A stretch of DNA of 63,829 nt, counting the filler, from Octopus bimaculoides (taxonomy: Eukaryota): the NCBI RefSeq assembly GCF_001194135.2. It is 6 parts of 6 records of this genome, joined end to end, with 100 filler letters (N's around TTAATTAATTAA, not from the genome) between each part and the next. Parts side by side here need not be neighbours in the genome. Positions count along the whole stretch, not along the records: positions 61,560 to 63,829 come from NC_068983.1; 5 more parts are not named here. One strand, 5' to 3'. Below, piece by piece: positions 61,560 to 63,479 of the stretch. Within the stretch, counting starts at the first letter, position 1, and each line of letters starts with the position of its first letter. The notes below the pieces were generated by a model. It made no database searches, was not told the DNA's origin, and worked only from the letters and a program-made list of their open reading frames with translations. The translations under genes were made by a program, and so were the position numbers.

Positions 61560-63479
61560 CTTCACTACTGACAGGCACACTTCGGGTAGCCCCGGGTACC
61601 GGCAGAGCCCCTTCTCGCTAATGGGCTCGACGTTCGTCACGTTTCAAGTCGGAACGCTTGTCACGAATTTGCTTCAGCGTCTTGTCCGGAAGTAGGGGGA
61701 CCACTGCCACAGCGATACTTTTGCACCCGGCCTCCAGCAGCTCCTTTTCCTTTTCTAGGAGGATTGCCACTTCCTCCTTTGTCCAACAACCCCGCGACGT
61801 ACGCCCCGTCGTCCGCGCGAGTTGTGCACGCTTTTCGCGCTTGCGTGCTATTTCGTCCCTGCGACGTTCTATCCTGTGCTTGTTCGCCTGCACAGGATGC
61901 TTGTGCCGTAAGTGTTGTGACAGGCCTACAGCCCGGCGGAAGGCCTGGCTGCACTCGTCACACTAATAAGGTGGCTGCTGGGGGTCCGGTGCCGCAGGAC
62001 CAGTGTTCCCCGGACACTTGGCGACGTGACATCTGACCGAGTGAAGGTGGCCGCTCTCATGGCCACAGCGTATGCATTTGTACGCAGGCTTACGGTTATG
62101 CCTGTTGAGTACGTGTAACCCCCATTCGATGGGGCTAGAGAAGTGTCTAGGACAGAGCGGGCATAACAGGGAGATCGACGCACATGGAATCTCTACGGTG
62201 AACGCATCGACCGACGGTTGGTTGGCCACGTCACCATCACCAGCATCCCCGGCGGGCGATCCGTNNNNNNNNNNNNNNNNNNNNNNNNNNNNNNNNNNNN
62301 NNNNNNNNNNNNNNNNNNNNNNNNNNNNNNNNNNNNNNNNNNNNNNNNNNNNNNNNNNNNNNNNNNNNNNNNNNNNNNNNNNNNNNNNNNNNNNNNNNNN
62401 NNNNNNNNNNNNNNNNNNNNNNNNNNNNNNNNNNNNNNNNNNNNNNNNNNNNNNNNNNNNNNNNNNNNNNNNNNNNNNNNNNNNNNNNNNNNNNNNNNNN
62501 NNNNNNNNNNNNNNNNNNNNNNNNNNNNNNNNNNNNNNNNNNNNNNNNNNNNNNNNNNNNNNNNNNNNNNNNNNNNNNNNNNNNNNNNNNNNNNNNNNNN
62601 NNNNNNNNNNNNNNNNNNNNNNNNNNNNNNNNNNNNNNNNNNNNNNNNNNNNNNNNNNNNNNNNNNNNNNNNNNNNNNNNNNNNNNNNNNNNNNNNNNNN
62701 NNNNNNNNNNNNNNNNNNNNNNNNNNNNNNNNNNNNNNNNNNNNNNNNNNNNNNNNNNNNNNNNNNNNNNNNNNNNNNNNNNNNNNNNNNNNNNNNNNNN
62801 NNNNNNNNNNNNNNNNNNNNNNNNNNNNNNNNNNNNNNNNNNNNNNNNNNNNNNNNNNNNNNNNNNNNNNNNNNNNNNNNNNNNNNNNNNNNNNNNNNNN
62901 NNNNNNNNNNNNNNNNNNNNNNNNNNNNNNNNNNNNNNNNNNNNNNNNNNNNNNNNNNNNNNNNNNNNNNNNNNNNNNNNNNNNNNNNNNNNNNNNNNNN
63001 NNNNNNNNNNNNNNNNNNNNNNNNNNNNNNNNNNNNNNNNNNNNNNNNNNNNNNNNNNNNNNNNNNNNNNNNNNNNNNNNNNNNNNNNNNNNNNNNNNNN
63101 NNNNNNNNNNNNNNNNNNNNNNNNNNNNNNNNNNNNNNNNNNNNNNNNNNNNNNNNNNNNNNNNNNNNNNNNNNNNNNNNNNNNNNNNNNNNNNNNNNNN
63201 NNNNNGAAACCAAGCGAAGGCACCAGATGACATACCGGCAACAGCAACACGCCCAGTCGGAAGAACGACCCGCCACACGTACAGGAAGGGAGGAAGCCGC
63301 ACCCCGTCCTTTGTATCGCCCCAGAATCAGCGAAGTCTCCCACCGTATCGGATCTGCCAGGGAGATTGGGTCGTTTTTGGTTTGTCCAATGCGATGCGAC
63401 AAATTCGGGATGGTTGAACCTCGCCCGACATAGCCAGCATCACGAACGTAAGCTCTCTTGCCACGACAAGGCAACGACC
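61560..63479 (-). mobile_element. R2 non-LTR retrotransposon (R2-A-type), 5' UTR and N-terminal ORF; RT and endonuclease not in the window
   Basis: One continuous frame from 62264 leftwards: CCHH finger (62098-62163), CCHC finger (62014-62076), TAG, CCHH finger CDECSQAFRRAVGLSQHLRHKH (61897-61962), Myb-like WTKEE...LPDKTLKQIRDKR (~61640-61785). HDV-like fold at 63369-63479. Internal N gap 62265-63205. Confidence 0.85.
63369..63479 (-). ncRNA. HDV-like ribozyme fold at R2 5' end (P1 5' strand missing)
   Basis: P2 GGUCGUU/AACGACC; P3 GCC/GGC around L3 UUGUCGU; P1 3' strand AAGAGAGCU; long P4 hairpin; J4/2 C-A-A-A with candidate catalytic C at 63379. Confidence 0.7.

What the first reader, a model, noticed from the sequence alone, without database searches (positions are those of the whole stretch)
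63369..63479. HDV-like ribozyme whose P1 helix is designed to pair with 28S rRNA, stranded outside rDNA
Seen: on the minus strand the R2 element starts GGUCGUU-GCC-UUGUCGU-GGC-AAGAGAGCU-UA-[hairpin: GUGAUGC/GCAUCGC, UCGGG/CCCGA]-C-CAAA-AACGACC. This gives P2, P3/L3, P4 and J4/2 of an HDV-like double pseudoknot with the catalytic C retained. No P1 5' strand exists upstream here. Established: many R2 ribozymes cleave inside upstream 28S sequence and use it as the P1 5' strand; the 28S sequence before the R2 site is ...ATGACTCTCTTAAGG. AAGAGAGCU pairs with GACUCUCUU at 8 of 9 positions, with a G1-U wobble. Inference: the source family lives in 28S rDNA and is released by co-transcriptional cleavage ~13 nt upstream of the insertion site. 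This copy is an off-target insertion with a disabled ribozyme. L3 (UUGUCGU) and P1.1 (G-U/U-A) are non-canonical.
Basis: partly seen in the sequence, partly recalled or inferred. Interest (0 to 1): 0.85.

Follow-up and report, generated by a model that had tools for sequence, protein, structure and literature searches.

The report
R2 retrotransposon ribozyme lacking 28S flank
This is the self-cutting RNA module at the front of a decayed R2 jumping gene, built to pair with ribosomal RNA as other R2 elements are known to do, in a copy that sits beside another retroelement fragment instead of the ribosomal gene; it is an ordinary new example of a known design.

Summary

About 1.2 kb downstream, in the same orientation, is a decayed three-zinc-finger plus Myb N-terminus matching R2 proteins (E 1e-17). 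So this is the 5' ribozyme of an R2 element.

The seven bases after P3 (AAGAGAG) are a perfect complement of 28S -11..-5 (p about 0.002). Related R2 elements fetched with real 28S junctions pair GAGAGUY with 28S -13..-7. A 28S-supplied P1 is therefore well supported, and it has been known since 2013, including a -13 class.

Not supported as written:
- The flank does hold a P1 partner: AGCUCUCU at 63741-63734, 8 Watson-Crick pairs, stronger than the 28S duplex.
- The copy lacks the 28S leader that an off-target full-length insertion should carry.
- The junction rests on one 624-base contig.
- The cleavage register, -11 or -13, is open.
- No copy of the same family was found.

Verdict: a new member of a known kind, of low to moderate interest.

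The parts
63473..63479 (-). P2 5' strand GGUCGUU; first bases of the R2-derived sequence
   Evidence: 7/7 Watson-Crick pairs with 63375-63369. RT homology of the flank ends 1-4 nt upstream.
63460..63472 (-). P3 (GCC 63472-63470 / GGC 63462-63460) closing L3 UUGUCGU (63469-63463)
   Evidence: L3 keeps U1, C5 and G6, the positions called conserved in R2 ribozymes (PMC3774820). The same 13-mer occurs in a complete HDV-like fold in L001.
63451..63459 (-). P1 3' strand AAGAGAGCU (7-nt core AAGAGAG, 63459-63453)
   Evidence: Core is a perfect complement of 28S -11..-5. The 9-mer pairs with -13..-5 at 8/9 positions with a G.U. p = 0.0017-0.004.
63449..63452 (-). Candidate P1.1 3' strand: CU (63452-63451, register -11) or UA (63450-63449, register -13), pairing with L3 positions 2-3 (UG)
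   Evidence: Read from the sequence. Only weak pairs in either register (C-G plus UxU, or U.G plus A-U). Inference.
63384..63447 (-). P4 domain: GUUC/GGAC, GUGAUGC/GCAUCGC, GGC/GUC, UCGGG/CCCGA
   Evidence: All pairs verified. RNAfold MFE contains the three inner helices; z = -3.6 for the 111-mer.
63376..63383 (-). J4/2 AAACCAAA with candidate catalytic C at 63379 (C-A-A-A, then P2 3' strand)
   Evidence: Same spacing as C-U-A-A-P2' in L001, L030 and L038. Position rule from PMC10879173. Not tested biochemically.
63369..63375 (-). P2 3' strand AACGACC
63206..63368 (-). Remaining R2 5' untranslated sequence up to the assembly gap
   Evidence: No family match.
62265..63205 (.). 941-N assembly gap hiding the rest of the 5' UTR and the start of the reading frame
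61560..62264 (-). Decayed R2 N-terminus: ZnF1 62163-62098, ZnF2 62076-62014, ZnF3 61962-61897, Myb 61785-61654; in-frame TAG at 61965-61963 and 61620-61618
   Evidence: E 1.6e-17 / 3.4e-17 / 1e-14 to R2Tg and two other R2 proteins in the PDB. Coordinates.
63480..63829 (+). 5' flank: fragment of a non-LTR-type reverse transcriptase read on the opposite strand (YMDD 63699-63710), with a frameshift near 63729-63735 and stops at 63741-63743 and 63800-63802
   Evidence: Pfam RVT_1 E 1.3e-10. 31 homologues. The alignment reaches IRHSMNKW. Best PDB hits are R2 RTs, E 5e-6.
63734..63741 (-). AGCUCUCU in the flank: alternative P1 5' strand, 8 Watson-Crick pairs with AGAGAGCU, 254 nt upstream of P2
   Evidence: P(8 or more in shuffled flank) = 0.016. 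On the other strand it encodes RELE of the RT.

Best explanation
Window 63479-63369 (minus strand) is the 5'-terminal HDV-like ribozyme module of a decayed, three-zinc-finger (A-clade-type) R2 retrotransposon.

The element itself encodes:
- P2
- P3/L3
- the 3' strand of P1
- a long P4
- J4/2 with a C four bases before the P2 3' strand

It does not encode a P1 5' strand. In a copy sitting in 28S rDNA that strand would be the rRNA just upstream of the insertion site. Two registers are possible: CUCUCUU at -11..-5, with seven Watson-Crick pairs, or GACUCUCUU at -13..-5, with a G.U and one AxC.

The 28S/R2 co-transcript would then cut itself 11-13 nt inside the rRNA. That would leave a short rRNA leader whose cDNA helps to make a precise 5' junction. 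This mechanism is inferred from the published R2 model.

In this copy the 28S partner is replaced by the antisense of a non-LTR reverse-transcriptase fragment, and the R2 frame carries stop codons. It is therefore a dead copy away from its normal 5' context. How the junction arose cannot be decided from this piece.
For: - All stated helices are present and verified.
- The nested fold has z = -3.6.
- The descriptor hits only this site in the piece, against 0.03 per shuffle.
- An R2-type 3xZnF+Myb frame lies downstream on the same strand, E 1.6e-17 to R2Tg.
- The fold starts within 0-3 nt of the point where flank RT homology ends.
- The P1 3' strand is complementary to 28S, p = 0.0017-0.004.
- The 28S sequence ACTATGACTCTCTTAAGG was confirmed at real R2 junctions.
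- Relatives L003 and L005 have P1' GAGAGUU/GAGAGUC pairing with 28S -13..-7, plus a compensatory change in P2: CUGGC/GCCAG against CUGAC/GUCAA.
- The P3-L3-P3-P1' core is 23/23 identical to a complete minimal HDV-like fold with its own CUCUCUU in L001.
- Published: R2 ribozymes take P1 from 28S, and -13 is shown for Nasonia vitripennis and Tribolium R2-B (PMC3774820; PMC11331408).
Against: - No Rfam family matches at E up to 10. The same search also misses the bona fide 28S/R2 junction ribozymes of L003 and L005, so this says little.
- No second copy of this family, 28S-flanked or not, was found.
- P1.1 is weak in both registers.
- The -13 register needs a 9-position P1 with a mismatch, outside the 4-7 bp reported for R2. 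The -11 register puts C, not G, at +1.
- The copy lacks the rRNA leader expected at an off-target full-length insertion (PMC2718515).
- No cleavage assay has been done.
Confidence: 0.75

Rival explanations
1. The junction at 63479/63480 is not an off-target R2 insertion. One possibility is that a 5'-truncated non-LTR element, read on the + strand, inserted next to an R2 that sat in 28S and removed or displaced the rRNA flank. Another is that the join comes from recombination in a decaying rDNA/R2 array. A third is a mis-join of two repeats in a 624-base contig. The ribozyme assignment stands; only the history differs.
For: - The RT fragment begins mid-domain exactly at the junction, which is how 5'-truncated LINE copies look.
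- No 28S leader precedes the R2 end, whereas non-28S copies made from leader-bearing RNA keep 7-28 bp of 28S in R1 (PMC2718515).
- The junction is carried by a 624-base contig between a 941-N gap and the end of the piece.
- A related contig, L005, shows messy arrays: an R2 copy without a 28S flank, followed by a 28S fragment and a second R2 5' end.
Against: - A LINE would have to land within a few bases of the 28S/R2 boundary.
- The boundary coincides with the first P2 base, as expected if that is the true element end.
- Extra-rDNA R2 copies are documented (PMC2718515).
- The other end of either element is outside the piece, so nothing is decided.
Confidence: 0.35
2. The ribozyme is not disabled here. 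Its P1 forms in cis with AGCUCUCU at 63741-63734, with a J1/2 of about 254 nt. A read-through transcript would then be cut about 262 nt upstream of the R2 boundary. This could be a fortuitous rescue, or this lineage may carry or target the RT fragment and have adapted P1 to it.
For: - 8 contiguous Watson-Crick pairs.
- Duplex energy of -11.8 to -12.6 kcal/mol, against -8.5 for the 28S leader.
- P(8 or more in shuffled flank) = 0.016.
- R2 ribozymes tolerate J1/2 loops of 216 to over 700 nt (PMC3774820).
Against: - The octamer encodes the RELE motif of the RT on the other strand, in a region aligned across that RT family. Its presence therefore needs no ribozyme.
- Part of P1' (GAGAG) is shared with relatives that pair with 28S.
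- The zinc-finger/Myb region resembles 28S-specific R2 proteins.
- A single locus gives no conservation evidence.
Confidence: 0.1
3. Chance resemblance: the helices are fortuitous and the RNA never was a ribozyme.
For: - The P1-less descriptor occurs in 3% of shuffled pieces, and in many places in unrelated loci when P2 is relaxed to 5 bp.
- No Rfam hit.
- Weak P1.1.
Against: - It lies at the 5' boundary and on the strand of an R2 frame.
- All 10 P2/P3 pairs are Watson-Crick, with a well-formed P4 (z = -3.6).
- P1' complementarity to the R2 target flank has p about 0.002.
- The identical core occurs in a complete fold elsewhere.
Confidence: 0.05

Closest known systems
R2 5' HDV-like ribozymes that cleave at -13 in 28S (Nasonia vitripennis R2; Tribolium castaneum R2-B / TriCasB, an A-clade R2) - PMC3774820, PMC11331408
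   Same: - Located at the element's 5' end.
- HDV-like order of helices.
- P1 5' strand supplied by 28S upstream of the insertion site.
- The predicted cut leaves about 13 nt of rRNA on the R2 RNA.
- A-clade-type protein N-terminus.
   Different: - Sequence unrelated outside the constrained core.
- P1' carries two extra A's next to P3, so the register may be -11 (7 bp, C at +1) rather than -13.
- P1.1 is weak.
- This copy is not in 28S, and its activity is untested.
Nematostella vectensis R2 'sea anemone A' ribozyme (PMC3774820)
   Same: Very compact design. The paper gives 23 nt between P1 and P1'. Here the distance would be 24 nt if the element starts at 63479 (AAGG + P2 + P3 + L3 + P3).
   Different: Only this spacing can be compared. 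The published structure is a figure that is not held, so sequence and cleavage site were not compared.
R2 elements in metagenome contigs L003 and L005
   Same: - N-terminus 32-36% identical to the window's.
- A real 28S/R2 5' junction in L003.
- P1' GAGAGUU/GAGAGUC pairs with 28S -13..-7, sharing GAGAG with the window's P1'.
   Different: - A J1/2 of about 60 nt inside the element.
- P3 is AGG/CCU.
- L3 holds an inserted hairpin.
- Canonical P1.1 (GG with CC).
Minimal HDV-like (theta-type) ribozymes of phages (PMC10879173), and the L001 example
   Same: - GCC-L3-GGC core.
- C-N-A-A before the P2 3' strand.
- L001 shares 23 identical bases (GCCUUGUCGUGGCAAGAGAGCUU) and has CUCUCUU as its own P1 5' strand.
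   Different: - The phage ribozymes carry their own P1 and have no P4.
- They lie in a phage-like contig next to a ROOL RNA.
- The identity is best read as convergence on a small active site plus chance. Such convergence is noted in PMC3774820.
Extra-rDNA R1/R2 copies (Drosophila, PMC2718515; Bombyx, Xiong et al. 1988 as cited in PMC3774820)
   Same: R2 copies outside 28S exist. They are often incomplete and diverged, and do not seed the active population.
   Different: Where the RNA carried 28S sequence (melanogaster-type R1), non-28S copies keep it at the 5' junction. This copy has none.

Membership tests
HDV-like self-cleaving ribozyme | Helix order P1-P2-P3-(L3)-P3'-P1'-P1.1-P4-J4/2-P2' (nested double pseudoknot) | tested here: inconclusive
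   P2 (7 bp), P3 (3 bp), P4 and P1' are in the right order. The P1 5' strand is not adjacent. It must come from 28S, which is absent here, or from 63741-63734.
HDV-like self-cleaving ribozyme | Catalytic C at the start of the last J4/2 bases, 3-4 nt before the P2 3' strand | tested here: met
   C63379 is followed by AAA and then AACGACC. The spacing is the same in L001, L030 and L038.
HDV-like self-cleaving ribozyme | L3 of about 7 nt with conserved U...C-G | tested here: met
   UUGUCGU. Conserved C and G of L3 as described in PMC3774820.
HDV-like self-cleaving ribozyme | Two-base-pair P1.1 between L3 and the bases after P1' | tested here: inconclusive
   Register -11 gives C-G plus UxU. Register -13 gives U.G plus A-U. 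Read from the sequence.
HDV-like self-cleaving ribozyme | Match to a curated covariance model | tested here: not met
   No Rfam hit at E up to 10. The control shows that Rfam also misses the real 28S/R2 ribozymes of L003 and L005, so the test has no power for R2 ribozymes.
HDV-like self-cleaving ribozyme | Self-cleavage dependent on the catalytic C | not testable with these tools
   Needs an in vitro transcription/cleavage assay.
R2 non-LTR retrotransposon (A-clade type) | N-terminal three C2H2 zinc fingers plus Myb motif | tested here: met
   E 1.6e-17 to R2Tg, aligned over ZnF1-3 and Myb. The frame has two TAG stops.
R2 non-LTR retrotransposon (A-clade type) | Single ORF with RT and C-terminal restriction-like endonuclease | not testable with these tools
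   That part of the element lies beyond the end of the piece (61560).
R2 non-LTR retrotransposon (A-clade type) | Insertion at the conserved 28S site ...CTCTCTTAAGG|TAGCC... | tested here: not met
   The 5' flank is an RT fragment, not 28S. The flank is 9/14 identical to 28S near the junction, which is not significant (p 0.02-0.1). The 3' junction is not in the piece. This concerns this copy only, not the family.
R2 ribozymes with 28S-supplied P1 | P1' complementary to 28S within about 36 nt upstream of the site | tested here: met
   AAGAGAG is a perfect complement of -11..-5. The 9-mer pairs 8/9 with -13..-5. p = 0.0017-0.004.
R2 ribozymes with 28S-supplied P1 | Copies of the same family joined to 28S with a uniform 5' junction | tested here: inconclusive
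   No family copy was found in any searchable collection. No animal genome or read set can be searched by DNA with these tools. Only distant relatives with 28S junctions were found (L003, L008).

The most novel reading that the evidence does not exclude
The ribozyme's working partner in this lineage is not 28S but the flanking retroelement. AGCUCUCU at 63741-63734 would supply P1. This R2 lineage would then either have captured an antisense RT fragment as a 5' extension, or have moved its target from rDNA to a dispersed LINE. It would use host-repeat sequence for P1 in the way other R2s use 28S.
Probability: 0.06. Interest if true: 0.6.

Novelty: new member of a known kind. Interest (0 to 1): 0.25.

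Why it matters
If confirmed, this adds one more lineage to the published set of R2 elements whose ribozyme borrows its P1 strand from 28S rRNA. It has an unusually compact layout, with P2 starting at the first element base, and a possible -11 register with C at +1.

A dead copy outside 28S is a natural 'P1-swap' specimen. It could show what happens to the 5' junction when the rRNA leader has nothing to anneal to.

None of this changes the current picture of R2 biology. The practical value is for annotation (Rfam models miss these ribozymes) and for groups that use R2 5' modules for transgene insertion.

Tried and rejected
- **Rfam at E up to 10 on the piece.** Only two noise hits. Judged uninformative after the same search missed the real R2 junction ribozymes in L002, L003 and L005.
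- **Protein search with the window's N-terminus alone.** Nothing found. A profile with two PDB R2 N-termini gave 27 hits, all 27-40% identical, so no family member.
- **Exact-product look-ups of four window ORFs, two of them spanning the junction.** None on record, so the junction could not be confirmed in another assembly.
- **20-mer core scan.** The metagenome scan gave one hit, and it is a phage-like contig, not an R2. Genome and viral collections gave none.
- **L002 'GGCAAAGAGC'.** It looked like a second P1' of the same kind. Rejected, because it is a diverged duplicate of 28S GGTAAACGGC.
- **28S-like microhomology in the flank as the cause of a leaderless junction.** 9/14 identity, p 0.02-0.1 depending on length. 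Not significant.
- **A link between HDV-like ribozymes and ROOL RNA.** Four descriptor hits in 1.68 Mb of ROOL-bearing contigs, at no fixed distance from ROOL. No association shown.
- **Xiong et al. 1988 (PMC338924).** Not held.
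Full report
**What is in the sequence**

The piece (61560-63829) is two short contigs joined by 941 N (62265-63205).

On the minus strand, 63479-63369 reads GGUCGUU GCC UUGUCGU GGC AAGAGAGCU UA C GUUC GUGAUGC ... GCAUCGC AUU GGAC AAACCAAA AACGACC.

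- P2 (GGUCGUU/AACGACC) has 7 of 7 Watson-Crick pairs, and P3 (GCC/GGC) has 3 of 3.
GUUC (63447-63444) pairs with GGAC (63387-63384), so P4 has four helices and J4/2 shrinks to AAACCAAA.
- C63379 lies four bases before the P2 3' strand.
- The nested part has an MFE of -42 kcal/mol, z = -3.6 against 200 shuffles.

**Is it more than chance?**

- A descriptor without P1 finds only this site in the piece. It occurs in 3% of dinucleotide shuffles, so the fold alone is only suggestive.
- It gains weight from position. It sits on the strand of an R2 reading frame and at its 5' boundary.
- It also gains weight from P1'. The seven bases after P3 (AAGAGAG) are a perfect complement of 28S -11..-5, p = 0.0017; seven contiguous pairs anywhere in the 9-mer has p = 0.004.

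**What the surroundings are**

- Downstream on the same strand, 62264-61560 encodes three C2H2 zinc fingers and a Myb motif. They align with R2Tg and two other R2 proteins in the PDB at E 1.6e-17 to 1e-14.
- That frame has TAG stops at 61965-61963 and 61620-61618, so the copy is dead.
- Upstream, 63480-63829 read on the + strand is a fragment of a reverse transcriptase (Pfam RVT_1, E 1.3e-10), with YMDD at 63699-63710. It is of non-LTR type, judged from its best PDB matches below.
- The RT fragment is itself decayed, with a frameshift near 63729-63735 and stops at 63741-63743 and 63800-63802.
- Its homologues align up to IRHSMNKW. RT homology therefore ends within 0-3 nt of the first P2 base.
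- Its best PDB matches are R2 reverse transcriptases (E 5e-6), ahead of LINE-1. The PDB holds few non-LTR clades, so this does not classify it.

**The 28S pairing**

- L003 2048-2065 reads ACTATGACTCTCTTAAGG, followed by an R2 5' UTR and ORF.
- L008 shows the same with a 24-nt tandem 28S duplication.
- L006 has TAGCCAAATGCCTCGTCATC after an R2 3' end.

AAGAGAGCU pairs with GACUCUCUU at 8 of 9 positions with a terminal G.U, at -8.5 kcal/mol.

Relatives support an rRNA partner:
- In L003, P1' GAGAGUU (2143-2149) pairs perfectly with GACUCUC (-13..-7), including G.U.
- In L005, the homologous P1' is GAGAGUC.
- Between the two, P2 shows a compensatory change, CUGGC/GCCAG against CUGAC/GUCAA.
- In L008, P1' UCAUAGUU pairs with 28S -19..-12.

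The literature already establishes the principle:
- Most R2 ribozymes take the P1 5' strand from 28S, 9-36 nt upstream.
- -13 was shown experimentally for Nasonia vitripennis and confirmed in co-transcription assays for Tribolium R2-B (PMC3774820).
- TriCasB is an A-clade R2, and designed Rz-13 modules cleave (PMC11331408).

**Register**

Two readings remain.
It needs a 9-position P1 with an AxC mismatch, longer than the 4-7 bp described for R2. It gives P1.1 as U.G plus A-U.
- -11 gives 7 clean pairs directly after P3, as HDV-like geometry expects. It puts C at +1 and leaves P1.1 as C-G plus UxU.

The only database match to the 20-mer core favours the 7-bp reading.
- L001 (JGI Ga0310695_10113406, 1146-1201) has CUCUCUU-AUAAAA-UCCGUA-GCC-UUGUCGU-GGC-AAGAGAG-CUUUAAA-CUAA-UACGGA.
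- This is a complete minimal HDV-like fold. It shares 23 identical bases with the window, and only 7 P1 pairs are possible there.
- L001 is a phage-like contig, so this is analogy and not homology.

**What does not hold**

- The flank does contain P1 partners. AGCUCUCU (63741-63734) makes 8 Watson-Crick pairs with AGAGAGCU at -11.8 to -12.6 kcal/mol, better than 28S. P(8 or more) in shuffled flanks is 0.016.
- R2 ribozymes tolerate J1/2 loops of hundreds of nucleotides, so 'disabled' is not shown.
- The octamer encodes RELE of the RT on the other strand, so I rate it a coincidence. It is testable.
- 'Off-target insertion' is also not shown. RNA cut at -11 or -13 carries an rRNA leader. Where R1 RNA carries 28S sequence, all full-length non-28S copies keep 7-28 bp of it (PMC2718515). 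Here nothing resembling the leader precedes GGTCGTT.
- The RT fragment begins mid-domain at the junction, as a 5'-truncated LINE copy would. A LINE landing beside an rDNA-resident R2, a rearrangement, or a mis-join in a 624-base contig all fit as well. The far ends of both elements are outside the piece.

**Searches for family copies**

None was found. None of the collections that can be searched by DNA holds animal genomes or their raw reads.

**Comparison and verdict**

The RNA works like, and most likely is, an R2 5' HDV-like ribozyme of the class that borrows P1 from 28S. The membership features that could be tested are met, except two. P1.1 is weak. The 28S flank of this copy is absent, which concerns the copy and not the family. 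Activity is untested.

All three ideas in the finding are published: P1 from 28S, a -13 class, and R2 copies outside rDNA. This is a new member of a known kind. I put interest at 0.25.

The least ordinary reading not excluded is that the flank octamer is the real P1 partner, through a captured or targeted retroelement. I give that about 6%.

Noticed in passing
L001 1146-1201 (+), JGI contig Ga0310695_10113406: A complete minimal HDV-like fold (P1 CUCUCUU/AAGAGAG, P2 UCCGUA/UACGGA, P3 GCC/GGC, CUAA before P2', no P4). It shares 23 identical bases with window 63472-63450. It lies 178 nt upstream of a ROOL RNA (1379-1953, 232 bits) in a phage-like contig with no tRNA nearby.
   Followed up: partly
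L030 (-) 677-731; L038 (-) 3010-3064 and 7604-7655: Three more minimal HDV-like (theta-type) candidates with a GCC-UxCACGU-GGC core and CUAA before P2'. They were found in 1.68 Mb of ROOL-bearing IMG/VR contigs, against 0 hits in the reversed-sequence control. They show no fixed distance to ROOL.
   Followed up: partly
window 63734-63741: AGAGAGCT on the + strand (codons RELE of the RT) is the exact reverse complement of 8 of the 9 bases of the ribozyme's P1 3' strand. It gives a stronger duplex than the 28S leader.
   Followed up: yes
window 63480-63829 (+): The flanking reverse-transcriptase fragment (YMDD 63699-63710) is decayed, with one frameshift and two stops. It begins mid-domain at the R2 boundary. 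Its best solved-structure matches are R2 reverse transcriptases (E 5e-6), ahead of LINE-1.
   Followed up: partly
window 63480-63493 (-): The last 14 flank bases (TGAGTGCCTTATGT, offset 1) match 28S TGACTCTCTTAAGG at 9 of 14 positions. p is 0.02-0.1 depending on the length chosen, so this is not significant. It would fit microhomology-guided 5' joining if real.
   Followed up: yes
L005 1-50, 548-690 and 5249-5380: The contig starts with an Illumina adapter-like string. Its first R2 copy has a -13-type ribozyme but no 28S on its 5' side. After that copy's 3' end come a 28S fragment (ACTATGACTCTCCTAAGG) and a second R2 5' end with a canonical L3 UCCUCGU.
   Followed up: partly
L008 2-50: A 24-nt tandem duplication of upstream 28S sequence at an R2 5' junction, with one substitution. 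This is the junction type described for R2s that cleave inside 28S.
   Followed up: no
L002 930-1070: Two to three diverged copies of the 28S stretch GCGGGTAAAC(A/G)GCGGGAGTAACTATGACTC lie at the 5' end of an R2. One copy mimics a P1' (GGCAAAGAGC) but is only decayed 28S.
   Followed up: partly
window 62265-63205: A 941-N assembly gap hides part of the R2 5' UTR and the start of the reading frame. The whole piece looks like a short scaffold made of two repeat-derived contigs.
   Followed up: no
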